Positions 37,845 through 62,623 of a DNA stretch of 64,000 nucleotides are shown one piece after another. Under the pieces are notes generated by a model that made no database searches, was not told the DNA's origin, and worked only from the letters and a program-made list of their open reading frames with translations. Origin of the DNA: Macrostomum hystrix (Eukaryota > Animalia > Platyhelminthes); contig CATNEN010000038.1 in NCBI GenBank assembly GCA_950097015.1, positions 3,348,001-3,412,000 on the forward strand, given 5' to 3'. Positions within the stretch are counted from its first letter, which is position 1. The number at the start of each line of letters is the position of its first letter. Both the position numbers and the translations under genes were made by a program.

Positions 37845-38841
37845 CAGTTCAACTGCTGAAATCTGAGGAGACACGCAAACCTTTTATGCAAGTGAGTACA
37901 GATAGAATACAAATGACACCACAGCCCAGCTGGGTTGAGTGCCTGTGCACAGCTGTGTACGGTGGTTTAGTCCATGGACAGAGGGAAGGACAGGACTCAA
38001 TGACATATATTGTCTGTAGTTGTACTGAGATTCGAACACCCAACCTATTTAAAATCTGAGCTTTTACCACTGAAGTGCAAGCTCCCTTTGCCATCATGTA
38101 CAAAATAACCGAAAATTAAATAACAATAGGCACATAAAACACTTTGATTTTTTTCTAGTTTATTAACAAATTAACACTTTTTAATTGACAGCCGGCGAAA
38201 TTTCCCAAAATATTTGTTTTGGGTAGAAAGAAAGCCAAACAGGTTAAGGCTAGAAGACAGAAGATGGTATCATTGGACACATGACAGATAAGAAAAAGAG
38301 CAATAAGATGGCCCACTGCTATCGATTCTTACATTATTATATAGAAATTAAATTTGCGCCAGAAATAGTTCATTTAAACAAAACTGAATATTTCAGTAGA
38401 AATTTAATTTCTGAATAATTAAGCAACAGAAAGGCCAAAGCTTTTCAGAATAAATATTCACGCAAAACAAAATAAACTAAATTGCCTGCATCAAAGTACT
38501 TTCTTTGTTTTCCACCAGACAAAACAAAATTCTTCTAAACACAGAATAAATTTAAAAGTATACTTTCTGTCATTAACCATGAACATACAGTTATAACTCA
38601 AAAGACATCAAATTGATGATCTTGTACTGTACTGAATATGCAAGCACTTGAAATTCTTATGGTACATTAACTAGCAGATGAGGCTGAGGGAAAGACTGCT
38701 CGCGTTTTAAGAGAAGGTTTAAAGGAATAATATGAAATATTGTTGGTTCGTTTATAGGCAAAAGCATCACCGTACAGCAACTGAACTAGAAAATGAGATG
38801 CGCTTGAATGGCTAGAAATATCCCGCTATGAGCAGTCAGGC

Positions 38842-39805
38842 AGATGAGGAAGGGTGAAGGAGAGATGAGGCATGGGGAAGGGGAGATGAGGCAGGAAGAA
38901 GGGGAGATGAGGCAGGAAGAAGGGGAGATGAGGCAGGAAGAAGGGGAGATGAGGCAGAGGGAAGGAGAGATGAGGCAGGAGGAAGGGGAGATGAGGCATG
39001 GGGAAGGGGAGATGAGGCATGGGGAAGGGGAGATGAGGCATGGGGAAGGGAGATGAGGCAGGAGGAAGGGGAGATGAGGCAGGAAGAAGGGAAGATGAGG
39101 CAGAGGGAAGGAGAGATGAGGTATGGGGAAGGGGAGATGAGGCAGGAGGAAGGGGAGATGAGGCAGGAAGAAGGGAAGATGAGGCAGAGGGAAGGGGAGA
39201 TGCGGCAGGAGGAAGGGGAGATGAAGGGGAGGAAGGGGGAAGGGAGGAAGGGGAGATGAGGCATGGGGAAGGGGAGGTAAGGCATGGGGAAGGGGAGATG
39301 AGGCATGGGGAAGGGGAGATGAGGCAGGAGGAAGGGGAGATGAGGCAGGAGGAAGGGGAGATGAGGCAGGAAGAAGGGAAGATGAGGCAGGAGGAAGGGA
39401 AGATGAGGCAGGAGGAAGGGGAGATGAGGCAGGAGGAAGGGAGGATGAGGCAGGAAGAAGGGAAGATGAGGCAGAGGAAAGGAGAGATGAGGTATGGGGA
39501 AGGGGAGATAAGGCAGGAGGAAGGGGAGATGAGACATGGGGAAGGGGAGATGAGGCAGGAAGAAGGGGAGATGAGGCAGGAGGAAGGGGAGATGAGGCAG
39601 GAGGAAGGGGAGATGAGGCAGGAGGAAGGGGAGATGAGGCAGGAGGAAGGGGAGATGAGGCAGGAGGAAGGGAAGATGAGGCAGGAAGAAGGGGAGATGA
39701 GGCAGGAGGAAGGGGAGATGAGGCAGGAGGAAGGGGAGATGAGGCATGGGGAAGGGGAGATGAGGCATGGGGAAGGGGAGATAAGGTATGGTGAAGGGGA
39801 GATGT
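38842..39805. repeat. 21-bp polypurine minisatellite (GAGATGAGGCAGGAGGAAGGG)n
   Basis: About 45 copies with strong purine/pyrimidine strand asymmetry. Confidence 0.96.
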
Positions 39806-40335
39806 TAGATAGTGCACTCCTAAAAAATCTGAAATTAGATAGTGCGCCGAGAAGACAATGAAAGTTGAAAGGGACAGCCAGAAAATGAGGCAGAATATCA
39901 AGGCATTTCTTACTTACCGTGGCGCCTTCAAAAGGCAATATAGATAGATTATCGATTAGACTGATGACATCAAGGCGTACAGTGTTTTTATATTTACAAA
40001 TGGACATTATCTAGGATTCAATTGATTTAAAAATCGACGAATAGAAAACTTGATTGCTCTGAAAAATCGATGAATCAAGTTTTAGTCGTTTTCAAAAATC
40101 TACGAATAAAGCCTCGCTGGATTACTTGCAACAAAAGAGAACTATGAAACTTGTCTTTTATTATTATGTATTCTATACTAATCCTATGTAGCACATTCAA
40201 TAGCTATTAGTAAAGGGAGCGATTAAATTAAGGCAACAGAACAGAACTAAATTAAATGTTCTAATTAAACAAAAAAATAGAAAAAATCCGGGTCAAGTTT
40301 AACAAATTGCGACACAAAAACATGGACCAAAAAGC

Positions 40336-47645: not shown

Positions 47646-50600
47646 TCAGGCGATGTGGCTGCCAGGCTTACCGGCGGACCGCTCAGTTGCCGGCCCCTCC
47701 ACTGGGTCGTAGAAACGAGCTCGGCCTATAGAAAATTGATTCAAGGATTTAAAAGAGTTTTATTCTCTGAAGCTAACTTTCTGCTCTTTTTTTAATTGAG
47801 TCCCATAGCCCAAAAGTCTTAGACGGGGTCGATATGCTAAATATGACATATTCTACCCATTTTTATATCTACCCCTTCCCCAAGGAAGGGCAGGAATCTA
47901 CCATCACTTCCCTAGGAGTCTACCATGCACTTACCCAGGAATCTACCATGCACTTCCCTAGGAATCTACCATGCACTTCCCCAGGAATCTACCATCACTT
48001 CCCTAGGAGTCTACCATGCACTTCCCCAGGAATCTACCATGCACTTCCCTAGGAATCTACCATGCACTTCCCCAGGAATCTACCATCACTTCCCTAGGAG
48101 TCTACCATGCACTTCCCCAGGAATCTACCATGCACTTCCTCAGGAATCTACCATGCACTTCCCCAGGAATCTACCATGTACTTCTACAGGAATCTACCAT
48201 GTACTTCCACAGGAATCTACCATGCACTTCCTCAGGAATCTACCATGCACTTCCCTAGGAATCTACCATGCACTTCCCCAGGAATCTACCATGCACTTCC
48301 CCAGGAATCTACCATGCACTTCCACAAGAATCCATGCACTTCCCCAGGTAAATCTACCACTTTCCCAGATATCTATCTCTTAATTGTACAAGCTTCTATC
48401 ATTCACATTACCTACCGCATTTCTATAGTGCCTCAGTTTAAATATTTTGAAAAAATTGACTAGCTAGACTGTGCTAGATGAATGTCTTAAGTTAAGCGCA
48501 CCCTATACCTCAGCTGTACAATGGGTTTCAGCAACAGCTGGATCAGAAATTCGTGTTGGTTTTTGTCAGCCCCCCCAGTCCATGGACTATACTGCGCTCT
48601 GCTTTTGGAAGTGCCGCACAATAGCTGTGGCTGTACCGTTGGCATTGTTTGGGTGCCATTGTTCTAGCATAGATTTTCTTAAATCCACTCTAGGCCTTGC
48701 CCTGAAATTCCTCTAATCTCAGGAAATAATCGAGTGCAATTATCGAAGTAAGAGACGGGTTTGTTGCTTTAGTGCTAGGCATTATTGAGTTTGTTTGTCC
48801 ACTTTGAAGTGTCACTCAGCACCCAGCCAGTTCACCCCAACGCAGACCCCCAACCTGCTCCGTACGGCTCCTCAATCCTGTAGGTCGTCTTCACTTTCAG
48901 GTCATCCCTCAGTCGCCTGGTTTGCACGGTGTACACCTTAAGATTGATTAGAGAATGGATTATTTGCTTATTTCTTGCATACTCTATTTCGAGTAATGTA
49001 CAAACATATTGACACTGAGAAGTCTGTCTTACGATGATAAAGATTATGAGCACAAGCAAGAAGACTCCGCCAATCACTGCAACCAGAATGATCAGGATCG
49101 TGTAGTCCTGAGAGGGTGCCACCGCAGGAGTTGCAGTTGTCGCCGAGACACTACGGGAAGATCCAGCTGTCGTAGTGTCCGCCAGAGGCGCTGTCGTGGA
49201 GTCTGTTACCGGAGCTGCTGTAACAGCTAAAGTTCATGAAAGAAAAAATACTGAATAAATTTAAGTTATTTCGACAAGGTACGCACTGACTCGATTAGTC
49301 AAAACAAAATTTACCTGAGGACCCCACGCTATCCACAATGATTCCGCCAAGGTCAGTTGCTTTTAGGCTTCTGCTAAGCAGATCAACCACTGTGGTTGGT
49401 GTATTTGTGGGTGTGTTTCGTACAACCATACTTCCAGTGACGACGACACTTCCAGCCGTAAACTGGAAGTTAACTACGTTTTGCAGTTCGCCGTATAGCG
49501 ATGTAGATCTTGAGGCCTTCATAATGCTCTCAAAGGCGTAATTCGCCAACTGCTTGTAGCGCCAGCTATTTGGATCCGAGTAGTCTGCGAACCATTGCAG
49601 ATTCGAAAAGCGGAAAGAAAATGGCACCGCAGTCACGCTTTTGAAAACTGGCTGATAATTTACTGGACAAATGCATGATGTAGTTGTTGGGATCACTGTC
49701 GTTGTGGTGGTCGGTGTTGTTGTTGTAGTTGACGTCGTGGTTGTTGTCGTGCTTGTGGTTGGTGTTGTAGTAGTAGTCGTTGGGGTTGTCGTGGTAGTCG
49801 TTGGGGTTGTTGTGGTAGTTGTTGGGGTTGTCGTAGTAGTCGTTGGGGTTGTCGTAGTTGTTGTTGGAGTCATCGTAGTCGTGGTAGTCGTTGGTGTTGT
49901 TGTAGTTGACGTTGTGGTTGTCGTACTTGATGTAGTTGGAGTTGTTGTGGTCGATGTTGTTGTGGAAGTTATGGACGTCGTTGGAGTAGTCATGGTTGTA
50001 ATTGGGGTTGTTGTCGTACTTGTAGTTGAGGATGTTGTTGGAGTACTCGTCGTCCTTGTTGTTGTTGGTGTGGTGCTTGTCGACGTAGAAGTTGTTGGTG
50101 TGGTGCTTGTCGACGTAGAAGTTGTAGGTGTGGTTGTTGTCGTTGAAGTTGTTGTCGATGTTAAAGTCGTAGGCGTAGTCGGTGTAGTTACAGCAGTAGT
50201 TGTTGTGGCCGTTGTCGATGTTGTAGTCGGTGTGGTTGTTGTCGTGGGTGTCGTGGTAGTTGGTGTCGTCGTAGTTGATGTGCTAGTGGTAGGAGTAGTT
50301 GTACTTGTTGTTGTGGGTGTTGTAGGCGTTGTGGTAGTCGTGGAGGTAGTTGTTGACGTCGTTGGTGAGGTAGTTTTAGTTGTTGTAGGTGTCGTAGTGG
50401 TGGTTGTGGTCGTTGTTGTCAGACAGACAGCCGGAAGTGGTGTGGCACACGCAAATATTTCTAGATAAAACTGATAGCTAGGCGACACTGGCGCCTGCAT
50501 AGTTTGCGGAAAGACAATGACGTTAGACATGTTGAATCCAACGGCGAAACAGAACTGGCCCTTAGTAGTTATGCTGGTCCTGGTTGACGACAGAAGATTT

Positions 50601-53600
50601 ACATAGTAGTCTGACACTGATGCCTTGTATCGAATAACAACATCTTGTACATTTCCGGTCAGACAAATCTAAAATATTTTAGGCCAAATATGCAAGGAAC
50701 GGAAAAATAAAAGAATTATCTATTTTAACAATAAAATAAGTCAAATATTCATTGCATGGTATAATAAATTGAAAGTTGGTTTCAAGCATACCTGATGTAC
50801 GTAAATCGAGTTACGACAGCCGTGAACTGTCAGATCCGCCACAATGCCGTCCGTTGTACCTACTGGAAAACTGTACCCAGAAATCGGACTGAAACTGCCA
50901 CCAACGATCGCAAACTGTGGCATGTAGATCTCGCTCGATAGAATATTTATGTATGGACAAACTAAAATAATAAATGTGGCACACAGTTAGCGCAAAAACA
51001 TCTTGACGAAAAAAAAAGTTTTTTTTCGTACCTGTAGTCGTCACGGTAGTTGTTGTCGGAGTTGTAGTTGTGCTCGTTGTTGTTGGTGTCGTTGTAGTTG
51101 TTGTCGCAGTTGTTGTTGATGTGGTTGTTGCAGTAGTTGTTGAAGTAGTCGTAGGTGTCGTGGTTGTTGTGGTGGAGGTTGTTGTTGTCAGGCAGCTTGC
51201 TGGCACTGTTTGAAAGCACCCATTTATAATAAGATACATCTGAAAGCTAGTGCTTGTTGATGATGCAGTTTTAAGCGTGCGCGGAACAATGATAAACTGC
51301 GCAACTGGGAACCCGAGACTGAAGCACAGATCTGCGGCTGTATCAGATGTTACTGTGCTGGCGAGATTCTGGAAGGGCGCTGTGTACAACTGCTTGTATC
51401 GAATCGAGGCCTCTCTGACGTTTCCAGACAGACATAGCTAAAAGTTCATCGTTTAAAAAAGGAACATATTTATGTTATAAAAATGGTGTTACGCTCCAGT
51501 GAATTTTAATGACGCCAAAGAAGCTCAGCTCACCTTATCAACATAAGTAGCAGAGACACAGTTTCGTATGGTGAGATCTACGGTAAGATATCCTTCGCTT
51601 CCAGTGCGAATATTGTAACCAGTGGCATCGCTAAAGCTATCTGCTCCCATAATGGAAGTCATCGGAAGTAATGCAGGGCTCGAGAGGGCATTGACGAACG
51701 GGCAAACTAAAAAGAAGTGTTTTTGGCCATCCATTAATTGTTTATCAGCTTTTATTTCATAAAAATCGAATACATAAATCAAAGGGTATCATCAAAAGAC
51801 TAAACTAACACGTGGTTCCGACAGTTGTGGTGCTTGTAGGAGTGGTTGCCGTGGTTGTCGTGCTGGTGCTCGCACTGGTGCTGGTTGTACTCGTGGTTGT
51901 TGTTGAGCTAGTTGTTGTAGTGCTTGTGGTGGTGCAACCAGGAATTGGCATGAAACAGCCATAAACTGACAGAAAAAACTGATAAGCTGTAGATCCTGAC
52001 GAAGAAGTCTTCAATTCTCTTGGAGCTATAATGATGGAGCTGACATTTAAGTTCAGGTCATAGCAGAGCAAGCCTGGGCCGTCCTGTGTGAGCGTCAGTG
52101 ACTGAGTCAGTTGTTGATAAGACTGCGTTGGTGACGTCTGATAAATAAGGTCCGCTCGCCTAACATTTCCTCCAACCAGGCAGACCTAGAATTCGATGCG
52201 AATAAAAAGTTTTTTAGGTTTGTGTTTTAAAATAAAAGGCTTGCAAAGTTGACATAGTTGAAGCTCAGAATTGTACCTGTGTGACATGCTCCGGGCGGCG
52301 ACAGTTGTTTGATGTCACGTCAATATAAAGTCCCTGGCCAGGAAGCATGGAGACAGTGTAGCCCGAAAAAGGAGAAAAGGTTGCACCGCTGATGGCCCAA
52401 GAAGGCAGCAGGGATGTGTCAGCGATTGCATCGACAGAAGGGCAGACTAAAGTTTTAATAAGCGAAAATAAAGTTTTTTTGAGAAACCAAAGCCTAATAT
52501 TATAAAACAGCATATATTCGTATGCTTACATGTTGGCTTAGGTGTAGTGGTCGTTGTCGCAGTGGTTGTTGAAGTTGTTGGTGTGGTTCTAGTTGTCGAC
52601 GTTGGTGTTGTCGATGTTGTCGTTGATGTGGTTGAAGGAGTCGTAGTTGAAGATGTCGTTGTACTTGTGGTCGTAGGGGTTGTTGAGGTTGTGGTTGTTG
52701 GAGTTGTGGTTGTGGTCGAAGTCGAAGTTAAAGTGGTAGTCGGAGTTGTTGTCGTTGTGGTTGTTGGAGTTGTTGATGTCGATGTAGAAGTCGTGGTACT
52801 TGACGTCGACGTTGTTGGTGTTGTGGTTGTTGTAGTTGTCGGTGTAGTCGTGCTAGTGGTTGTTGATGTAGTTGTCGATGTGGTTGTTGGCGTTGTAGTT
52901 GTGGTGGTCGTCGGAGTTGTCAGGCAAGCGCCCGTGAGTGGCGTAAAGCAGGCATCGATTCGAACAAAAAAATTAAATGCCGTGTCTGTCGAATAAGACG
53001 ATTTTAATCGCAGCGGAACAATTGCGAGCTGTGCAACGGTATCTTTGTTTAAAATAGTGTAGCACCAAGGGTTGTTCGTGTCTATTGAAATGCTGGCTGC
53101 GGAAAAATCTGGTGTGTACTTTTCGCCCTTAATTCTAGCGTACAGCAAATTCGCTTCCCGGACATTTCCTATAAGGCAAACCTAAAATATGAATTTGCTT
53201 AGTTGCTAAGAAGCACGAAGGAATTTTGAATGCTTTTTTATTAAAAGTTTCTTTACTGAAACCAAAACTTGCATTTTAAACACAAAAGGCTTACTAACCC
53301 GATCAACAACGATTGGCGGTCTGCACGAATTGACGGTGAGGTCAATTACCAAGCTCCCATTCCTCAGAGGCAACCTGTAGCCATAGAACGGGTCGTATTC
53401 TCCACCAGATACGGCAAAGGATGGAATCAGATTTGACTGGTAGAAGCCGTCGATCAGGCATGTGGTTGTGGTCTCCAAAGTGGTGGTTGGTGTAGTCCTG
53501 GTCGTGGTTGATGTAGTTGTACTCGGAGTTGTGGTCGTAGTTGTTGTCGGTGTTGTTGTCGTGGTAGTAGTTGTTGGTGTCGTTGTTGTTGATGTGGTCG

Positions 53601-56600
53601 ATGTCGTTGTGGTGCTAGTACTGGTGGTCGTGGTTGGGGTTGTCAGGCATGTCGAATTCAGTGGGTACACGCAGGCCATTAGGGACACGAAGAACTGATA
53701 CTCGGTGGAGATATAGCCAGGCTTCGTTCCTCTGGGAACAATCATCAGCTCGGAGGTGAGGCGATTGAGATCATAACAGATTGGATCACCGGTGGAGGAA
53801 GTCTTTCCAGGGGTGCTGAAGTCGAGCACGAGCTTGTCACTAGTTGGCTCTCGAATCATAATTCCTGCGCTGAAGACATTTCCAGCTATACAGAGCTGAA
53901 ATGATTTGCATGTTTTTAAAGAGCTGTAAGAGTAATATAACTTCGGATCAATCATCTGATGTTCTGTAATACACAACTGATAGTTCTTACGCGAGAAACT
54001 ACAGTCGCCGGTCTGCACCCAAACACTGTAAGATCAACCCTAAGACCAGCAGAGCCAATAGGAAGAATGTAGCCTGCAAAATCGCGGTATTCCCCTCCCG
54101 TTATAGCGAACGGTGGAATAAGGTCTGAGCGGCTGAACGCATCCAAGAGACATGCTGAAATTGCGAATGAGCCATGTTAAACGATGCGGTGTTTATCAAG
54201 AAAAAGTTATCGAAATGTTTATAAAAATATTGACCGTATTGGAGTTATTCGTTGTTAGAATAAATATTAGAAGCCATTAAAAATTACTTGTTGTTGTCGT
54301 TGGTGTTGTCACTGTAGTAGTAGTTGGAGTAGTTGTAGTTGTCGGCGTTGTTGTAGTGCTCGTTGTAGGCGTTGTTGTCGTTGTAGACGATGTTGTGCTT
54401 GTAGATGGTGTCGTTGTGGAGGTTGCGGTTGTCGATGTCGTAGTAGGGATTGTTGTTGTCGGAGTTGTGGCGGTGGAAGTGGTTGAAGTCGAGGTTGTGG
54501 GTGTGGTAGTCGGCGTTGTTGTGGTTGCTGTTGATGTAGTTGTCGGTGTAGTTGTTGATGTGCTAGTTGTAGTTGTTGTCGTACTCGTGGTACTGGTTGT
54601 GGTAGTGGTCGTTGATGTCGTCGTTGGTGTTGTTTGGCAGGTTTCGTTTAAAGGTAGAAAACAGGCTTGGATTGTCAAGAAAAACTCATAGTTTGAGTTT
54701 CCTGTTTGAAGCACTGTTGGCTTAATCTGAAGTTCAACCATGTCGATGTTTAAGTTGTAGCACAACTGCGGTGTGGATGTTTCAATTGTTACTGAATCGG
54801 TGTAAAGCACAGGATAGTCCAAAAATGTCCTTCGATAAACGACGTTTGACCTTTTAACGTTGCCAATCAGGCAAACCTGCAACGGATTGCGAAGCATTTT
54901 GTTCATTGATTCTGTGTTTCGCTTAATGTTAAACTAATAATATAGAAATCTGACCATATGACCCGTAGTTAGAAATAGAGATACCCACAAATAGTTAAAA
55001 CATTTTTTATAATGCCTTACCTGTTTAACATTCAAAAAACCACGGCAACCACGTGCTGTGAGGTCGATGGCCATATAGCCACCGCTAGATACTGGAATCG
55101 TCCAACCTTTAGCTCCGTCGAAAGTTGCTCCAGTGATAGTAAAAGATGGTAGGTAGACAGGACTTGACAAGCCATTAACCACTGGGCAAACTGGAATAAA
55201 AAAGAGATCGATCGATTGGCAATTCATAGCAATGAATAAATAGTAAAGTACCAGAGATCATAAAGCACAATCATACTTGTTGTAGGCACGGTAGTTGTCA
55301 GCGTCGTAGTCAGAGTTGTTGATGTCGTTGTAGTTGTCGTTGATGGTGTTGTTGTGGTTGTTGTGGTTGGCGTTGTCGTAGTGGATGTGGTAGTTGTTGT
55401 TGGAGTAGTTAAACAAGTGCTGTTCAACAGTGTAAAGCAAGCCTTGATGGAGATGTACGCACGAAACGCGGTATCAGAGCTAAACGCGCTTTTCAGCTGC
55501 TGCGGAGAGATCCGCACACCGGTTAGCATCATGCCTGTTGGCGGAGTGAAGCATAGCGGATCGGACACCCCCGGTGCCGACTGGCTGGCTGAAAGAATGT
55601 TTGGACTGTAGCTCCCACCATAGACCGTTTGGTACAGGATGTACGAGGTCTGAATGTTTCCGAGGAGACAAATCTGAAAGTTTTATGATCTGGCGATTGT
55701 AAAACAGCATTCCATATTACTATTTTTTTAAGAAATGGCAGATCCAGAAATAAAGTAAAAACTACTCACACTTTCAACTTTAATCGGCGAGCGACATCCG
55801 AATACGGAAAGATCAACAGTCATAGCAAATGACCCTCCAAGAGGAAGTATGTACCCAGAAACAGTCGAGGTAGCTCCGCTAATTGCAAATGGTGGAATAA
55901 ATCGCTCATCAGATAAGCCATCAACAGCACATGATGCTGTTGTGGTTGTAACAGTTGTGCTAGTACTCGTCGTGGTGCTTGTCGTCGGGGTTGACGTCGT
56001 CGGAGTTGTCGTCGTTGTCGACGTCGTGGTTGGTGTGGTTGTGGTGCTTGTTGTTGATGTGGTTGTCGTTGGAGTTGAAGTGGTGGTTGAAGTAGTTGTG
56101 GTAGTGCAGGATGTTGGTAAAGGAGTGAAACAGGCTTCGATAGTGAGGAAGAACTGATACGTTGAGGTGTCTAAAGTTCCACTCTTGAACTCCTGTGGAA
56201 TAACTCTCAACTCGCTTATGGGAAGCATAGGGAAGTAGCAAAGTGGATTTGCTGTGTCGCTCGTGTTGTACAGAGACATGACAAAGAAGTCCCAGAAGAG
56301 GTTAGATCCTTGTCGAATAATTAAATTAGCTCTTTTAACGTTGCCACCGAAAAGACAAATCTAGAATGTGCGAATTATCAAGTCAAAATATATATGAGAG
56401 CGTGTTAGAAAGCTTTAATTACTTCTAAGTTATAAAAACTTACCCGGTTAATTAGTATGGGAGTACGGCATCCAGAAACTGATATGTCTATATAAACACC
56501 GTCTACTGAACCCCTAGGTACATTGAATCCAGTGATCGGGTTGTAAGATGGAGCACTGATTGACGAGCTCGGAATATAGACGCCATTAACTCCGTTGACT

Positions 56601-59600
56601 AAGCAGGATGTTGTTGTTGTCGGAGTTGTCGTTGTTGTCGTAGTAGCTGTCGTTGTGGTTGTTGGAGTCGTGGAAGTAGTTGTTGGAGTTGTTGAAGTTG
56701 ATGTAGTTGTTGATGTTGTAGAAGTTGTGGCGGTCGTCGTCGTAACAGGCTGGGTTTGGCACGATGCAGAGAGCGAAGTAAAACAGCCCTCGAGATTCAG
56801 GAAGAAAGAATAGTTTACATCGGATGAGGAACTATTTTGCAAGGCGACAGGTGTGATCGCGATGCCGGTTATGTTTGCTCCAAGGGTTATGCAGAGAGGA
56901 GTCGCTGAAGATGAAACGGAAACCAAATTAGATTCTAAGACAAGATCGAAACGACCAGTCGGATAGTTTGTCTGCGTGGACACCGTCACTTGTCTGACAT
57001 TGCCAGTTACACAAACTCGAGTCAAATAAGTCGGACTCGGACGACATCCACCGGCGGTCAAATCGATTATAAGATCCCGACGAGCACTGACAGGCATTTC
57101 ATATCTGCCCGTGACATACGTAGCGCCGATGATAGCCCAGTCTGGAATATATTGCCTATCACTTAGACCATTTATTGCTGGGCATATGGTTGGCTTCACA
57201 GTAGTGGTTGTCGTTGTTGAGGTCGTTGTGGAAGTTGTCGGTGTTGTTGAAGTCGAAGTTGTAGTCGTTGTTGGCGTTGAAGGTGCTGTTGTTGTTGGAG
57301 TAGTTGTCGTAGACGTTGTTGTACTAGTCGTTGGCGTTGTTGTCGTCGTTGGACTCGTTGTTGTTGGGGTTGTTGTTGTCGAGGTCGTCGATGTCGTGGT
57401 CGGAGTTGAAGTGGTTTGTGTTGTTGTCGTTGATGTTGAAGTTGTTGGTGTTGTAGTGGTAGAAGTAGTGGGAGTGGTTGTCGTTGTTGTCGAAGTTGTG
57501 GTTGGAGTTGTGGTTGTCGTAGTTGTTGGTGTCGTGGTTGTCGGTGTTGTTGTTGTGCTGGTTGTGGTTGTACTCGTAGTTGTCAGACAACTGGAATTCA
57601 AATGAACAAAGCATCCGTAGACATTCATATAGAATGCAAAGCTCGGTCCTGTTCCAGCGATTACAGTTTGAGGCATCAGCTGCACTGCGGTCACATCCTT
57701 GTTAATTTGAAGACACAGCAGACCACTACCACCGGTCACGCTTGCTGGGAAAAGTACCAGTCGAGAATTTCGATTGTCCTGGAGCGCAATCAAAGTAGTT
57801 TGCACGTTACCACCTAGACAGACACTAAAGATTCGAGTTGGAGCCCGACATCCACGAGCCGAGACGTCAATCACGATGGAGCCTAGAGGTTGCACAACAA
57901 ACGCTCCAGCGCCGTTGATCATTGCTCCTGTGATGTCCTGGTCGGGAATGAACATGGAGCTCGACATTCCATCCTGTACCGGACAGTCTGAAAGGCATAT
58001 ATGTAACTTTGTGAAGTTGCTGAGAAGTTAACTCAATGTGAAGCGAGCAGAACTGAAAAATCATATGCCTAAATTAATCAAGCCCGTTGATTAGGAAGAA
58101 TTAGAGCAAACTTGCGATTAAAATATAAATAATACACATTAGGCTTACAAGTTGTGGGTGTAGTCGTTGTTGTTGAGGTTGTTGTCGACGTTGTCGGAGT
58201 TGTAGTTGTTGTGCTGGTAGTTGTTGATGTTGTTGTTGGCGTTGTACTAGTAGTGCTGGTTGTTGTAGGAGTTGTGGTGGTTGTGGTTGGAGTCGTTGTT
58301 GGTGTAGTCATCGTGCTGGTTGTTGTTGGAGTAGTTGTTGTAGTTGCTGTTGGTGTCGTTGTAGTACTAGTGGTTGTTGGTGTCGTTGGCGTCGTGGTCG
58401 ATGTAGCTGTTGATGTTGTCGGTGTGGTCGTCGTAGATGTAGTCGAAGTTGTCGTTGTTGAGGTGGTAGTTGTTAGACAGGTCGCGTTCAGGTTTGTGAA
58501 ACAGCCGTGAATAGAAAGGAAGAAAAAGTACGAAGTGGTTCCTGTCGTCTTAAATAACTGTGGAGCGATTTGAACACTGATGACATCCATGTTAACATCA
58601 ATGCACAGAATTTCTCCTTCCTTTGCGGTAAGCCTAGCCGAGTCTGGTATCAGATAGGGTATTACGAAAGTGTTAAACCGAACTAGAACAAACGCTTGCG
58701 CGACGTTTCCAGCCATGCAGACCTGCAAGAAAAGTGTCATACGTTTAATTTGAAAAAAAAGAAATGAACTTGATCATCGCAATCGGTTTTTATTGTCCAA
58801 ATCTTGTCGCATATTTCATAGATTGCAAATCAGAGAGTATTACTTACCCTCATCACTCGTGTCGCTGGTCGACAGCCCCTAGCAGAGATGTCAACAATTA
58901 TGGACTTTCCGGGCGCCAATGTGAACGCACCCGAGACCTCTCGTCTGCCATCGGTCGCAATGTCAGTTTCCGGTATCATTGAGGGATAAAGAAGGCCGTC
59001 AACAATCGGACAATCTAAAAAACAAATATAAATGAAAATTATAAATCATCAGTAAATTTAAGGCGCCTAATACGACAATGCACTCTCTTTTTAGCTCCTT
59101 TGCTTACGGAATGAGGCATTGCTAACCTTACATTTTATTTTTCTTACGTCTTGTACACATTTTCAAGCTTACAAGTCGTTGTAGGTGCCGTAGTTGTTGT
59201 GCTAGTTGTTGGCGTTGTCGTAGTCGGCGTTGTTGTTGTGGTCGTAGATGTGGTCGTCGGAGTTGTAGTAGTCGAAGATGTGGTCGATGTAGTTGTTGGT
59301 GTCGTTGTTGAAGTGGAAGTTGTGGGAGTGGTAGTCGTTGTTGTAGAAGTAGTGGAAGTTGTCGGAGTCGTTGTTGTTGTGGTGGTGGTCGGAGTTGTTG
59401 TGGATGTTGTTGTGCTTGTTGTCGTCGTAGGTGCAGTGCAAGTGCTTGGAAGCGGTTCAAAGCATCCCTCAATAGTGACAGAAAAACGATAGTGCAGGTT
59501 GGAAGAGTCGTATGATTTTATCATTTGCGGTGCGATTCTCACAGCCGAGATATTAAATCCAAGCGAGTAGCACAGAGAATCGGAAATTGTATCACCAGCT

Positions 59601-62600
59601 GTCACAAATGACAGCACAGAGAAAACTAGATTTGACGCGCCGTTTCTCTGTATTAGAATGTTTGCCTGCTTGACGTTTCCATTCAAGCATATCTGCAATA
59701 ATCATGTGTTCGGGTTGTTTTCTCATAGTAATACTCAGCGTTTGATTTTTCAAAGATTTAATAACTAAATTTCTAAATTTTACCCTCTCAATGTAAACAG
59801 GGTTGACACGGCAGTTAATGGCCGACAAATCAATATCCATATAACCAATAGTCGAACGAGGAATGCTGTACCCGAAAATTTCGTCAGACAAGACGCCACT
59901 GACAGAGTAAGGCGGGATGTAGATGTTACTTGAAAGTCCGTTGATCAGCGGGCAAACTAAAATGGGAGCATTTTAGTAGCAATTTATATATCTGACACTT
60001 AAAATGACGAGTAGAGAAAACGTTTACAAAGCATAACTTAAGCGCAGTTCCTACTTGTGGGCTTGGGAGTGGTCGTTGTTGTTGTTGTCGTCGATGTGGT
60101 TGCTGTAGTTGTTGTAGTCGGAGTTGTTGTCGTCGATGTCGTTGTTGGTGTAGGCGTCGTTGTTGTAGGCGTTGTTGTTGTCGATGTTGTTGTTGAAGTC
60201 GATGTCGTTGGTTTTGTAGTAGACGTAGTCGTTGCTGTGGTTGTTGTTGGAGTAGTAGAAGTTGTCGTTGGAGTCGTAGTTGGTGTTGGTGTGGTCGTTG
60301 TTGTTGGGGTTGTTGTCGTTAAAGTTGTTGAGGTGGATGTTGTCGTTGGAGTTGTGGTGGTTGTGGTAGGCGTTGTTGTCGTCGTAGAAGTTGTGGTAGT
60401 TGACGTTGATGTTGTTGGCGTAGTGGTGGTTGTTGTTGTGCTAGTTGTGGGGGTAGGTGTTGTGAGGCATATTGCTGGCAAGGGCAAAAAGCAAGCATTA
60501 ATCGTCAGATAGAACTGGTACTGAGTTCTACTCGCTGCGGAGGACTTGAATTCTAGTGGGAAAATTCCGATCTGGGCTGCAACCAGTTTTATATCGTAGC
60601 AAAGATCGCCCACATCATTCGAATCTGACGCGGTTTTCGGGACGGGTGTGAATGGCCGACTACTCGACTCGCGGTACAAGATGCTAGCTCTCTTGACTGT
60701 TCCACTTATACAGATCTGAAACGATGGGTGAAATCATGCTTTAAACTCCCTTGGTTTGTTCATTCGATAGTTTTTTAACCAACTATACGCTCGTATTGTT
60801 AAAATTGTTAAATTGTTAAAATTAAATTTATGAAATCTGCATGCTCTAGACTTTTCTATTGTCGAGTCTACTGAATGTCGAGAGGAAACTTAAAATCCCT
60901 TGCTTACTACTATAAGTAGGTTCTATAAGGATGTGGTGAATCATCGCAATCCGTCTCACCGATTCAACTAGGATCGGGCTGCGGCAAGTTCCCAGGACCA
61001 GATCAACTAGCATGACATCGTTCTGGTTGACCAACCAGCCTCTGAACGGATCCGACATGGCGAATTGAACAGCGGTTGGCGGAATGTAGGAGAAATCAGA
61101 CATGCCGTTCACGATTCGACAGTCTACAAGGACGAATAGTTCATTATTATTCAACTTAGTCCTACTGCGAAATCATGCTCTGTAAATGCCACTCACAGGT
61201 CGTCGTTGTTGGTGTGGTAGCCGTGGTGGTTGTCGACGTGGTAGTGCTAGTGGTTGTCGATGTTGTCGCGGTGGTCGTTGCTGTCGTAGGCGTTGTAGTC
61301 GTTGTAGTTGAAGTAGTAGGCGTCGTTGTTGTGCTAGTCGTGCTAGTAGTCGGGGTTGTCGTTGTGGTAGTTGTGGAAGTAGTTTGGCAGCTGTCGTTCA
61401 CTGGCGTGAAGCAGCCATCGATGGTCAGAAACACCTGGTACGAGGAAGCTGAAAGCGCGCCAGACTTTAGTGCGGCGGGATAGAGTGCCAGACGAACCAT
61501 CCGCGCATTGAGGTCATAGCACAGCCGAGATCCGCTGACGTCGGAGAACAGCGTGCTGGATGGTTCAAATGGAATATAGCGACTGCTCATTGTGGGCATA
61601 TACTTGACGAACGCTCGAAGCACGTTGCCAGTCATGCACAGCCTTTGGATGTAGACCTCAGTAGTCCTACAGCCTTCGATAATGAAATCGAATTCCATCT
61701 GCTCGTTGAAGTTGATTAGGAAATCACCCGATAAGCCCGGACGACCACCATTGATGGATTTGTCCGGGATGTAGGACTTCTGCGACAGACCGTTCACATA
61801 GGCGCACACTGAAAGAGAGGCCAGAATTCGCTAAGCCAAAATATGATCGAACAGTTGTCCTTGAGCAAGAAAATTAATTTCACCTAGCTGTAAAATGGTT
61901 ATCGGTATTAGGTAAGGTAGTAGTCAGGGTGGATGTGGTGGCCATGTTCGCAGCTTATGGAATCGCAATAGATGCGGCTGTGCTACCAGTTATAAATGTG
62001 GCCCAAATTGCCCAGGACTAATTATAAATACTCGTACATGTTCATATTCAGCAAATACGCGTGTAATGCATATCTTATATACTAAAAATGAAATGGTTGG
62101 TTGCTTGTAATTGATTTTCTCCCGAACGGCTCAACCGATTTTTCAATCATACTAAAGATTGAACCCAAGGGTCCAAAACTATTTTTACCTGGTGTAGTCG
62201 TTGGCAGCTGCGTCGTTGTCGACGTACTTGCAGTCGTCGTCGTGGTGGTTGTCGGTGTCGTGGTGGTTACGGTGGTAGTCGGCGTTGTCGGAAGTGGCGT
62301 GGTGAAGGCATATTTGGTTGTCAAAGGCACGCATGAGCAGAAAGGTTCCGGTGTTGTGAAACTGGCAGCCGGGCAGCACAGTGCAGCCAGCAGAATGAAT
62401 GCGGCTACACCTGCGGTGACAGCGGTTTATAGCTTCAATTAACGAAATATATTTTTAAGCTAATTTTTAGTCACGAGATAGTCGTTATTTTATTCGATCG
62501 AGCGTATGTTTGATTTTCGTACGCATTTCTTAATTTTACTACTTACGAAGTGCAAACTTGATTAGAATAAATTACAGAATAAATAAGATTGTTCGTAAAT

Positions 62601-62623
62601 CAATCAGCTTCACCTTCCAACAT
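47646..62623 (-). CDS. Giant type I membrane mucin-like protein: signal peptide, 14 Cys-rich discoidin-like modules with Thr-rich spacers, SEA domain, TM helix, cytoplasmic tail (roughly 3,500 aa, estimated)
   Basis: Exon 62623-62614 (ATGTTGGAAG) splices to 62410-62189, giving MLEGVAAFILLAALCCPAASF. A repeating module follows (C..NGLS...YIP...I.G...LxIDLT..GCR...|ICLxGNV...LCY...IxP...YQFFLTIxACFxPL...C-TTT). SEA at ~49320-49650 (FSFRFSNLQW...YSDPNS...FTAGSVVV); TM ILIILVAVIGGVFLLVLIIFII at ~49030-49100; terminal exon GRARFYDPVEGPATERSAGKPGSHIA* ends at 47646. Confidence 0.85.
47890..48365. repeat. 23-bp minisatellite (AGGAATCTACCATGCACTTCCCC)n
   Basis: Tandem copies in the last intron of the mucin gene. 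Confidence 0.95.

What the first reader, a model, noticed from the sequence alone, without database searches (positions are those of the whole stretch)
47646..62623. Giant beads-on-a-string surface mucin with 14 divergent discoidin-like modules and a self-cleaving SEA domain
Seen in sequence: 14 copies of a ~130-aa module with 6 invariant Cys, starting near 61809, 61125, 59957, 59014, 57989, 57185, 56605, 55932, 55191, 54155, 53462, 52447, 51707 and 50961. Each is followed by a ~40-250-aa Thr/Ser/Pro stalk, and the chain ends SEA-TM-tail. Established: F5/8 type C (discoidin) domains begin C..LG....IP...I.ASS, contain LxIDL and end IxP...ELxGC, which these modules echo loosely; G|SVVV is the MUC1-type SEA autoproteolysis site. 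Inference: a sheddable, multivalent glycan- or lipid-binding glycocalyx/adhesion filament with diversified binding heads. I do not recognise this architecture from any named protein family.
Basis: partly seen in the sequence, partly recalled or inferred. Interest (0 to 1): 0.85.

Follow-up and report, generated by a model that had tools for sequence, protein, structure and literature searches.

The report
Flatworm membrane mucin with discoidin beads
A Macrostomum flatworm gene, real and expressed, encodes a cell-surface mucin of about 3,600 residues whose sugar-carrying thread carries 14 different discoidin-fold "beads" and ends in a SEA domain, a membrane anchor and a short tail; this is an unstudied lineage-specific variant of known membrane mucins, not a new kind of protein.

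Summary
One 26-exon gene lies on the minus strand, from the ATG at 62623 to a stop ending at 47683 or 47646 (two alternative tails). Every intron is GT-AG and the frame stays open for 3,587 or 3,603 residues.

The protein reads: signal peptide, conserved two-cysteine tip, then 14 six-cysteine modules of 133-142 aa. The modules are 23-42% identical to each other. Each is followed by a 42-249 aa stalk of about 73% threonine. Then come a SEA domain with GSVVV, one membrane helix and a tail.

Spliced contigs from three public runs reproduce the last ten introns exactly. One contig spans four modules.

The "discoidin-like" reading holds for the fold. The model has pLDDT 93.7, and its best structural matches are all discoidin (F5/8 type C) domains, at Z about 12. 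It does not hold for sequence: Pfam PF00754 and a small profile-profile test find nothing. The SEA fold is also confirmed.

The module family is rare: 16 hits among 1.84 billion proteins, from Macrostomum lignano, one chiton and unnamed contigs. The genome holds paralogs, and module positions correspond one to one with a 14-module copy.

This scan already noted what is probably that paralog on other DNA (s1-381993).

Function is inferred: an apical glycocalyx mucin with lectin-like heads. I class it as a new variant of a known kind.

The parts
62614..62623 (-). Exon 1: ATG plus 7 nt (M-L-E-G...), phase-1 donor GTGAAG
   Evidence: Sequence read. Needed because exon 2 has no in-frame ATG. Both close paralogs have a similar phase-1 ATG mini-exon. 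Not checked with reads.
62189..62410 (-). Exon 2: signal peptide, conserved tip motif PEPFCSCVPLTTKY, first short Thr-rich stalk
   Evidence: The tip motif is conserved in both close paralogs and in M. lignano P0001.
61387..61806 (-). Module 1 (140 aa, no internal intron)
   Evidence: E 1.5e-44
60467..61121 (-). Module 2 (137 aa; phase-0 intron 60716-60959)
59438..59954 (-). Module 3 (142 aa; intron 59693-59783)
58477..59012 (-). Module 4 (137 aa; intron 58723-58847)
57587..57985 (-). Module 5 (133 aa, no internal intron)
56759..57184 (-). Module 6 (142 aa, no internal intron); the module that was folded
56106..56605 (-). Module 7 (139 aa; intron 56361-56443)
55413..55931 (-). Module 8 (141 aa; intron 55674-55769)
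   Evidence: M. lignano P0005 is 84% identical.
54637..55188 (-). Module 9 (136 aa; intron 54877-55020)
53647..54152 (-). Module 10 (137 aa; intron 53896-53990)
52924..53460 (-). Module 11 (140 aa; intron 53182-53298, donor GTTAGT)
   Evidence: The intron is seen as a joint in three runs.
51934..52444 (-). Module 12 (140 aa; intron 52186-52276)
   Evidence: Joint seen.
51192..51704 (-). Module 13 (139 aa; intron 51438-51533)
   Evidence: Joint seen.
50423..50959 (-). Module 14 (138 aa; intron 50669-50791)
   Evidence: Joint seen.
49682..50422 (-). Longest stalk (249 aa, 73% Thr), with five exact TPTTTTTT repeats
   Evidence: Transcript contigs break at about 50090-50096 inside it.
49316..49681 (-). 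SEA domain (122 aa)
   Evidence: Pfam PF01390, E 4.6e-10. AF2 pLDDT 82.6. Foldseek top matches are MUC16, TMPRSS11D and TMPRSS6 SEA domains.
49439..49453 (-). GSVVV, the candidate autoproteolysis motif (cut expected between G and S)
   Evidence: Read from the sequence. It lies between the model's strands 66-74 and 80-88. Cleavage was not tested.
49033..49098 (-). Transmembrane helix (22 residues), which ends exactly at the exon 24 donor
   Evidence: Sequence. Joint 49033|48936 seen in three runs.
48866..48936 (-). Exon 25: basic juxtamembrane tail. An alternative donor 11 nt downstream makes the exon end at 48855.
   Evidence: Joints 47725|48866 (X2, X5) and 47725|48855 (X7)
47646..47725 (-). 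Exon 26, coding part. The stop ends at 47683 (3,587-aa isoform) or 47646 (3,603-aa isoform).

Best explanation
This is one expressed gene of a Macrostomum flatworm for a type I membrane mucin. Shown: a signal peptide and a conserved tip motif with two cysteines. Shown: 14 globular modules with a discoidin (F5/8 type C, galactose-binding-domain-like) beta-barrel fold, each followed by a Thr-rich stalk of mucin type. Shown: a juxtamembrane SEA domain carrying the GSVVV motif, one transmembrane helix, and a short basic tail in two splice forms. Inferred: the stalks are densely O-glycosylated and stiff. They would hold the 14 heads at different heights above an apical epithelial membrane (epidermis, pharynx or gut) as part of the glycocalyx. 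Inferred: each head keeps its own identity across paralogs and species, so the heads are under selection as distinct binding units, for glycans, lipids or proteins of microbes, mucus or neighbouring molecules. Inferred: the SEA domain cleaves itself during folding into two non-covalently held halves, which lets the ectodomain come off under force, as in MUC1-type mucins.
For: Gene model: 26 exons, all GT-AG, no stop. Ten introns match spliced contigs in runs X2, X5 and X7 exactly, and one 2.4-2.6 kb contig crosses modules 11 to 14. Module fold: pLDDT 93.7. Discoidin domains fill the top of both structure searches, at Z 11-12.2 and rmsd about 3 A over 120-127 residues, ahead of CBM32 and DOC domains at Z about 10. 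SEA. Stalk composition. Position-specific conservation: modules 1-14 each match best the same-numbered module of the paralog on contig C29 (39-58%, a perfect diagonal), against 23-42% within the protein. M. lignano orthologous modules are 74-84% identical. The same layout (modules, then SEA, with the same unsplit modules 1, 5 and 6) occurs in the C29 paralog. Literature: SP-PTS-SEA-TM is the standard plan of membrane mucins and has been reported in a sea anemone (PMC9080433). F5_F8_type_C domains are described as characteristic of lophotrochozoan mucin-like proteins (PMC4948705).
Against: There are no data on tissue, glycosylation, cleavage or ligand. The discoidin kinship has no sequence support: PF00754 misses the modules, the module profile finds no PDB sequence, and hhalign against five canonical discoidin fragments of the same genome gives probability 0.2% (that alignment was small and fragmentary). 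Fifteen introns and the start codon rest on sequence logic and paralog comparison alone. No single transcript contig covers the whole gene, because the contigs break in the repetitive stalk. The run types are not on record; that they are RNA is inferred from the precise intron removal.
Confidence: 0.6

Rival explanations
1. The beads are structural, not ligand-binding. Like CysD domains in gel-forming mucins or the SEA repeats of MUC16, they would interrupt the glycosylated thread, set its stiffness and spacing, or link neighbouring mucins to one another, with no outside ligand.
For: The alternating bead and PTS design matches MUC16 and CysD-bearing mucins (general knowledge). Three disulfides per module and a frequent N-x-S/T sequon just before the last Cys point to a robust scaffold. 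Discoidin domains such as retinoschisin act by oligomerising, and retinoschisin is among the structural matches.
Against: Simple spacers would not need 14 distinct identities kept one-to-one between paralogs and at 74-84% between species. The most variable parts fall in long loops (columns 70-100), as expected of binding loops.
Confidence: 0.2
2. It is a dedicated adhesion or recognition receptor and not a general glycocalyx mucin. Examples would be the surface partner of the secreted glue on anchor-cell microvilli of the adhesive organs, or a gamete or mating recognition molecule.
For: In M. lignano the glue protein Mlig-ap1 is proposed to hold on to the glycocalyx of anchor-cell microvilli (PMC6410801). 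Tandem discoidin proteins serve adhesion in echinoderms (papers listed). The family is restricted to the lineage.
Against: There are no localisation data. The transcript is present at moderate depth in whole-animal runs of two studies. Orthologous modules are well conserved, not fast-evolving.
Confidence: 0.15
3. It is not one functional gene: several adjacent genes, a pseudogene, or an assembly artefact of repeats.
For: Transcript contigs break in the long stalk near 50090-50096. One contig joins 49917 to 50349 at very high depth, which looks like repeat collapse.
Against: The frame stays open over 10.8 kb across 25 canonical introns. Spliced contigs link SEA, helix and tail, and link modules 11-14. 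The modules differ too much for repeat collapse. A paralog has the same 14-module order.
Confidence: 0.03

Closest known systems
Vertebrate SEA-type transmembrane mucins (MUC1, MUC3, MUC12, MUC13, MUC17) and the 'mucin1-like' SP-PTS-SEA-TM proteins reported from a sea anemone (PMC9080433)
   Same: Signal peptide, long Thr/Ser/Pro stalk, juxtamembrane SEA domain with GSVVV, single helix and short tail. Stalk length varies between samples: 3- and 6-nt indels.
   Different: Those mucins have one continuous PTS region, at most with EGF domains near the membrane. Here the PTS is cut into 15 pieces by 14 globular discoidin-fold modules. Outside the SEA domain there is no sequence similarity.
MUC16 (CA125)
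   Same: A membrane-tethered beads-on-a-string design: many folded modules separated by glycosylated linkers. MUC16 SEA5 is the best structural match of this protein's SEA domain.
   Different: The MUC16 beads are SEA domains and are similar to each other. Here the beads have a discoidin fold and are only 23-42% identical.
Discoidin / F5/8 type C domains (Pfam PF00754: factor V/VIII C2, neuropilin b1, DDR1/2, CASPR2, discoidin I, retinoschisin)
   Same: Eight-stranded beta-barrel fold at Z 11-12. A Cys at the first residue and a Cys near the end lie at the ends of the aligned range. A loose motif echo: C-x3-(N/D)G-x5-IP-x3-I, then 'IDL', then 'GC'.
   Different: No detectable sequence homology. 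There are four extra Cys per module. The canonical discoidin genes of the same genome are a separate set.
Hemolectin/hemocytin-type and lophotrochozoan gel-forming mucin-like proteins with F5_F8_type_C domains (Lang et al. 2016, PMC4948705); sea-urchin nectin and sea-star Sfp1 adhesives (papers listed)
   Same: They combine discoidin domains with mucin-like or adhesive extracellular proteins, and are said to be typical of Lophotrochozoa.
   Different: Those are secreted and VWD-based or plain tandem discoidins, recognised by Pfam. This protein has no VWD, is membrane-anchored through SEA and a helix, and alternates each bead with a PTS stalk.
Chiton Liolophura sinensis 'mucin-2-like' XP_064614628.1 (P0007) and M. 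lignano UniProt entries A0A1I8G2V1, A0A1I8FZS0, A0A267DIP9
   Same: They carry the same module family (E 9e-29 for the chiton; E 1e-47 to 1e-191 for M. lignano) with Thr/Pro-rich linkers between modules. The M. lignano entries are orthologues or paralogues.
   Different: The chiton modules keep only the first Cys and a CC pair near the module's end, and the model shows no SEA or helix. The M. lignano models are fragmentary or frame-shifted and carry only automatic names. None has been studied.

Membership tests
SEA domain (Pfam PF01390) | Match to the family profile above the curated cut-off | tested here: met
   40 bits against a cut-off of 26.4, E 4.6e-10, profile positions 3-95 of 106
SEA domain (Pfam PF01390) | Alpha/beta sandwich fold of solved SEA domains | tested here: met
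   AF2 pLDDT 82.6 with strand-helix-strand-strand-helix-strand order. The seven best Foldseek matches are SEA domains, TM 0.55-0.73. phmmer against PDB sequences found none.
SEA domain, self-cleaving subtype (MUC1 type) | G-S-[VI]-V-V motif in the turn between strands 2 and 3, and actual cleavage | tested here: inconclusive
   GSVVV is present at residues 77-81 of the domain, between model strands 66-74 and 80-88. Cleavage itself cannot be tested with these tools. The C29 paralog has GSVRA and two distant copies have no GS.
Membrane (SEA-type) mucin | Signal peptide, PTS region, SEA domain, single helix, cytoplasmic tail, in that order | tested here: met
   The stalks total about 1,350 residues at roughly 73% Thr.
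Membrane (SEA-type) mucin | Dense O-glycosylation of the PTS region | not testable with these tools
   Inferred from composition only
Discoidin / F5/8 type C (Pfam PF00754) | Distorted eight-stranded beta-barrel of the galactose-binding-domain-like type | tested here: met
   Z 12.2 (CASPR2), 12.1 (factor V C2, neuropilin-1 b1), 11.8 (discoidin I), 11.6 and 11.4 (DDR1, DDR2)
Discoidin / F5/8 type C (Pfam PF00754) | Sequence match to the family profile | tested here: not met
   No Pfam hit at E<=1 for modules 1, 5 and 6. A genome-wide PF00754 scan hits 58 other places but none in this gene. hhalign against own-genome discoidins gives probability 0.2%. I therefore file it as discoidin-fold, not as a PF00754 member.
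Discoidin / F5/8 type C (Pfam PF00754) | Disulfide joining the N-terminal Cys to a Cys at the C-terminal end | tested here: inconclusive
   The structural alignments run from model residue 1 (first Cys) to 135-142, just past the fifth Cys at 134. The chiton relatives (P0007) keep the first Cys and a CC pair at the fifth-Cys position, and P0011 and P0015 a single Cys there.
Discoidin / F5/8 type C (Pfam PF00754) | Ligand binding through loops at one end of the barrel | not testable with these tools
   The most variable alignment columns (about 70-100 and 115-125) fall in loops of the model. Which end of the barrel they occupy could not be read.
Gel-forming mucins / hemolectin type | VWD-C8-TIL units and a cystine knot | tested here: not met
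   No such Pfam hits in the exon translations scanned (exons 2-3, 10, 15-16, 23-24). The rest of the chain is fully taken up by modules and stalks.

The most novel reading that the evidence does not exclude
The 14 heads form a fixed, position-coded array of different lectin-like binders displayed at graded heights on a sheddable stalk. This would be a membrane mucin that not only shields the cell but also reads out or traps many different ligands (microbial glycans, the animal's own glue or mucus). The SEA break point would work as a force-sensitive release. It would define a macrostomid 'discoidin-mucin' family with no counterpart among described mucins.
Probability: 0.2. Interest if true: 0.7.

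Novelty: new variant of a known kind. Interest (0 to 1): 0.5.

Why it matters
Membrane mucins have been studied almost only in vertebrates, where the glycosylated thread is essentially featureless. This flatworm shows a complete, expressed example in which the thread carries 14 folded heads, each individually conserved. That gives a natural test of whether a glycocalyx mucin can also act as a multivalent binder. The genus is a laboratory model with RNAi and in situ methods, and its temporary-adhesion mechanism is proposed to depend on the glycocalyx, so the function can be tested. The gene also adds a strongly diverged discoidin-fold family that no domain database covers. The components (PTS, SEA, discoidin fold) are all known, so this is an extension and not a surprise of principle.

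Tried and rejected
1. Pfam on exon translations: only SEA was found and nothing for the modules. Pfam on the database relatives gave no discoidin hit either.

2. phmmer or hmmsearch of a two-module exon, the SEA domain and the module profile against PDB sequences gave nothing meaningful.

3. Profile-profile comparison of the module alignment with five canonical discoidin fragments from the same genome gave probability 0.2%. That reference alignment was shallow and made of exon fragments, so this is weak negative evidence.

4. ESM Atlas look-alikes of module 6: best score 0.78, below the level that means anything.

5. SL trans-splicing at the exon 2 acceptor as the source of the start codon: rejected. 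The premise that the Macrostomum spliced leader ends in ATG is from my memory. An ATG placed directly before exon 2 reads ATG-GTG-TAG (sequence).

6. Several genes, a pseudogene or repeat collapse: rejected.

7. Literature searches for Macrostomum with mucin, SEA, discoidin or glycocalyx, and for the M. lignano locus tag, found no paper on this protein.

The taxa behind the unnamed metagenome hits P0010-P0016 therefore stay unknown.

10. An earlier scan note says the glue protein Mlig-ap2 shares the bead design. The ap2 paper mentions no discoidin and I did not test the claim.
Full report
**What is there**

Stop-to-stop translation of the minus strand between 47 and 64 kb shows a long series of open pieces. 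They alternate a cysteine-bearing segment with a run of about 73% threonine. I enumerated GT donors and AG acceptors that keep the frame and obtained a single model. After correction with read evidence it has 26 exons.

Exons, high to low coordinate:
- 1: 62623-62614
- 2: 62410-62189
- 3: 61808-61197
- 4: 61123-60960
- 5: 60715-60055
- 6: 59956-59784
- 7: 59692-59173
- 8: 59014-58848
- 9: 58722-58149
- 10: 57987-56444
- 11: 56360-55770
- 12: 55673-55277
- 13: 55190-55021
- 14: 54876-54288
- 15: 54154-53991
- 16: 53895-53299
- 17: 53181-52530
- 18: 52446-52277
- 19: 52185-51810
- 20: 51706-51534
- 21: 51437-51032
- 22: 50961-50792
- 23: 50668-49315
- 24: 49226-49033
- 25: 48936-48866 (alternative donor: exon ends at 48855)
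- 26: from 47725 down to a stop ending at 47683 or 47646

Every intron is GT-AG. 22 of the 25 introns are 70-244 nt; the first is 203, the second 380 and the last 1,140. The product is 3,587 or 3,603 residues.

**How the joined model was handled**

The joined coding sequence and protein exist only inside local scripts, where they served for frame checks, module extraction and identity tables. No joined sequence went to any search, fold or database tool. Those tools received single exons or parts of exons by reference. Three modules (1, 5 and 6) lie within single exons and served as full-length queries. The other eleven entered the alignment as separate N- and C-halves (alignment A1).

**Transcript evidence**

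The stretch 47650-53640 was laid against Logan contigs of four runs. Runs X2, X5 and X7 come from organism A in two studies. They carry contigs in which the following joints appear, all with CT..AC ends on the plus strand, which is GT..AG on the minus strand:
- 53181|53299
- 52446|52530
- 52185|52277
- 51706|51810
- 51437|51534
- 50961|51032
- 50668|50792
- 49226|49315
- 49033|48936
- 48866|47725 (48855|47725 in X7)

These are my predicted introns to the base. The data also corrected my first model, which had read on through the donor that follows the membrane helix.

One contig of 2.4-2.6 kb runs from the stalk after module 11 (X2), or from the start of exon 17 (X5, X7), through modules 12 and 13 to the stalk of module 14. 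Another joins the stalk, SEA, helix and tail exons. The contigs break at about 50090-50096, inside five exact TPTTTTTT repeats.

The run types are not on record. I take them as RNA because the introns are removed precisely, while the probable source run X1 holds 98% of the genomic words. Run X9 (labelled organism B, possibly RNA) holds near-identical spliced pieces.

They rest on four things: canonical sites, the frame, recurrence of the same two intron positions in every module, and paralog comparison. Both close paralogs also need a phase-1 mini-exon carrying the ATG.

**The modules**

Fourteen modules of 133-142 aa each hold six Cys in fixed register. The consensus is roughly C-P-x-(V/I)-(N/D)-G-L-S ... 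I-P ... I-x-G ... (I/V)-D-L ... G-C-R ... (I/V)-C-L-x-G-N-V ... L-C ... I-x-P ... Y-x-F-F-L-x-I-x-(G/A)-C-F-x-x-L-x-x-x-C.

Pairwise identity is 23-42%, mean 32%. Eleven modules carry a phase-0 intron at the same place, after G-C-R plus eight or so residues. Ten stalk-to-module junctions carry a phase-1 intron just before the first Cys. This is the footprint of growth by duplication of an exon pair.

A profile of the modules finds no further copy elsewhere in the window.

**Fold of the module**

AlphaFold2 on module 6, with A1 as its alignment, gave mean pLDDT 93.7 and pTM 0.87. The model has eight main strands.

Foldseek against the PDB returned discoidin domains almost exclusively among its best matches: muskelin, neuropilin b1, factor VIII and factor V C2, retinoschisin and lactadherin C2, with E 7e-5 to 2e-3 and TM about 0.5; a few non-discoidin jelly rolls (HSPC034, IFT25) appear lower down.

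The search that does not depend on Foldseek gave these scores, each over 120-127 of 142 residues at about 3 A rmsd:

| Match | Z |
|---|---|
| CASPR2 discoidin | 12.2 |
| Factor V C2, neuropilin-1 b1 | 12.1 |
| Discoidin I | 11.8 |
| DDR1, DDR2 | 11.6, 11.4 |

IFT25, DOC and CBM32 domains follow at Z 9-10.8. So the fold is the galactose-binding-domain-like barrel, closest to the discoidin branch.

Sequence methods do not see this. There is no PF00754 hit on the modules. A genome-wide PF00754 scan finds 58 places, none in this gene or its paralogs. The module profile finds no PDB sequence. hhalign against five canonical discoidin fragments of the same genome gives 0.2% (that reference was weak).

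I therefore call the modules discoidin-fold and do not file them under PF00754.

The structural alignments span from the first Cys to just past the fifth. The chiton relatives keep the first Cys and a CC pair at the fifth-Cys position, and several single-module relatives keep a single Cys there. It is therefore likely, but not shown, that the first and fifth Cys form the canonical discoidin disulfide and the other four Cys form two added bridges.

**Stalks, SEA domain, helix and tail**

- The stalks are 42-249 aa, with T 64-78%, S 7-21% and P 2-12%.
- The SEA domain passes Pfam's cut-off.
- With the SEA exons of four paralogous loci as alignment (A2) it folds at pLDDT 82.6.
- Its seven best PDB matches are SEA domains of MUC16, TMPRSS11D and TMPRSS6.
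- GSVVV sits in the turn between strands 2 and 3. From general knowledge, that is where MUC1-type SEA domains cut themselves. Cleavage remains untested.
- The 22-residue helix ends exactly at an exon border.
- The tail is basic next to the membrane and has two endings, produced by alternative donors 11 nt apart.

**Relatives**

The module profile was scored against 1.84 billion representative proteins and found only 16 hits at E<=1e-3. By cluster names the five looked up among the nine strongest (P0001, P0003, P0004, P0005, P0007) are Macrostomum lignano predictions, fragmentary or frame-shifted and with automatic names only, except the chiton protein Liolophura sinensis 'mucin-2-like', which has seven modules between Thr/Pro-rich linkers. 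P0002, P0006, P0008 and P0009 were not looked up; their sequences nearly duplicate the named M. lignano entries. The remaining hits are unnamed proteins on eukaryote-like metagenome contigs, some with a VWC domain. No planarian or parasitic flatworm protein appeared.

M. lignano modules orthologous to modules 2, 3 and 8 are 74-84% identical to ours, so the window comes from a congener. Its genome is 220 Mb in 42 contigs. An earlier scan note names the species as M. hystrix; I did not verify the species.

**Paralogs in the same genome**

- C29:8209789-8224195 (+) has 14 modules and a SEA domain. It has the same unsplit modules 1, 5 and 6. Each of our modules matches best the same-numbered module there (39-58%), a perfect diagonal.
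- C38:3269170-3285800 (+) lies about 113 kb from our gene in opposite orientation. It has ten modules corresponding to our 1 and 6-14 (52-96%) and a SEA domain with GSVVV.
- C15:1573463-1585284 (-) holds at least 14 divergent, intronless modules in Thr-rich frames.
- C39:6376057-6380441 (+) holds a small gene with a few modules and a SEA-like end.

The 14-module order therefore predates the duplication. The duplication in turn predates the split from M. lignano, whose P0001 goes with the C29 copy. The modules have not been homogenised. Each position is conserved as itself, which is the main argument that the heads are functionally distinct.

The tip motif PEPFCSCVPLTTKY is conserved in all three close paralogs and in M. 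lignano.

**Function**

Nothing here shows function. The most economical reading is by analogy with SEA-type membrane mucins: an apical glycocalyx protein whose stiff O-glycosylated stalk carries lectin-like heads. The rivals are structural spacers or cross-linkers, and a dedicated adhesion or recognition receptor; the report lists them with tests. The M. lignano adhesion paper proposes that the glue holds on to the glycocalyx of anchor-cell microvilli (PMC6410801). That makes a glycocalyx mucin of this genus worth testing, but it is no evidence for this gene.

**Novelty**

- SP-PTS-SEA-TM mucins are standard and have been reported in a cnidarian (PMC9080433).
- F5_F8 domains are described as characteristic of lophotrochozoan gel-forming mucin-like proteins (PMC4948705).
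- No searchable paper describes a membrane mucin whose thread is regularly interrupted by discoidin-fold beads, nor this Macrostomum family.
- Within this scan the design has been noted before on other DNA of the same genome. Note s1-381993 is probably the C29 paralog. Notes s1-262272, s1-410592 and s1-410595 describe secreted mucins with discoidin-like beads.

I rate it a new variant of a known kind, of moderate interest.

Model coordinates cannot be read, so disulfide pairing and loop geometry are inferred.

Noticed in passing
G000:C29:8209789-8224195 (+), loci L032/L033: A full paralog: 14 modules in the same order, with the same three unsplit modules, then a SEA domain with GSVRA in place of GSVVV, then a helix. 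M. lignano P0001 is its orthologue.
   Followed up: partly
G000:C38:3269170-3285800 (+), loci L030/L031 (about 113 kb from this gene, outside the window): A paralog in inverted orientation with ten modules (equivalents of 1 and 6-14, 52-96% identical) and a SEA domain with GSVVV. The two halves of its module 11 equivalent lie about 5.9 kb apart, which could be an insertion or an assembly gap.
   Followed up: partly
G000:C15:1573463-1585284 (-) and G000:C39:6376057-6380441 (+), loci L034-L036: More distant members. C15 has at least 14 divergent, intronless modules inside Thr-rich open frames of up to 1,357 aa. C39 is a small gene with a few modules and a SEA-like end lacking the GS motif.
   Followed up: no
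window 48855-48866 and 47646-47725: Two alternative donors 11 nt apart shift the frame of the last exon and give two different C-terminal tails. X2 and X5 use 48866; X7 uses 48855.
   Followed up: yes
window 49715, 53522, 53582: In-frame length differences in the stalks between runs: 3 nt missing, 6 nt inserted, 3 nt missing. This is mucin-like VNTR variation between samples.
   Followed up: no
window 62300-62345 (tip motif); L030, L032: The mature N-terminus carries a motif (PEPFCSCVPLTTKY) that is nearly invariant across three paralogs and two species. It is far more conserved than the modules, and its role is unknown.
   Followed up: partly
modules 1, 4, 5, 8, 9, 10 (for example window 57587-57600): An N-x-S/T sequon sits directly before the last Cys in six of the 14 modules, so N-glycosylation at the module-stalk junction is likely.
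   Followed up: no
L032, C29:8208794-8209290: A tandem array of a unit of about 66 nt (about seven copies) lies directly upstream of the C29 paralog's first exon.
   Followed up: no
window 48297-48808: A low-depth 512-nt contig (X5) lies inside the 1,140-nt last intron. It could be unspliced precursor or a small separate transcript.
   Followed up: no
window 38001-40000: Extreme base skews (GC skew 0.54, AT skew 0.34) on the plus strand, inside the region of another note (s1-850735). Not examined.
   Followed up: no
G000, 58 places (for example C1:8455104-8498246, C3:4452994-4462611): Large tandem clusters of PF00754-positive exons with a 'CC-x-(D/E)-R-L-N-x-F' signature. They look like fucolectin-type lectin arrays and are unrelated to this gene.
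   Followed up: no
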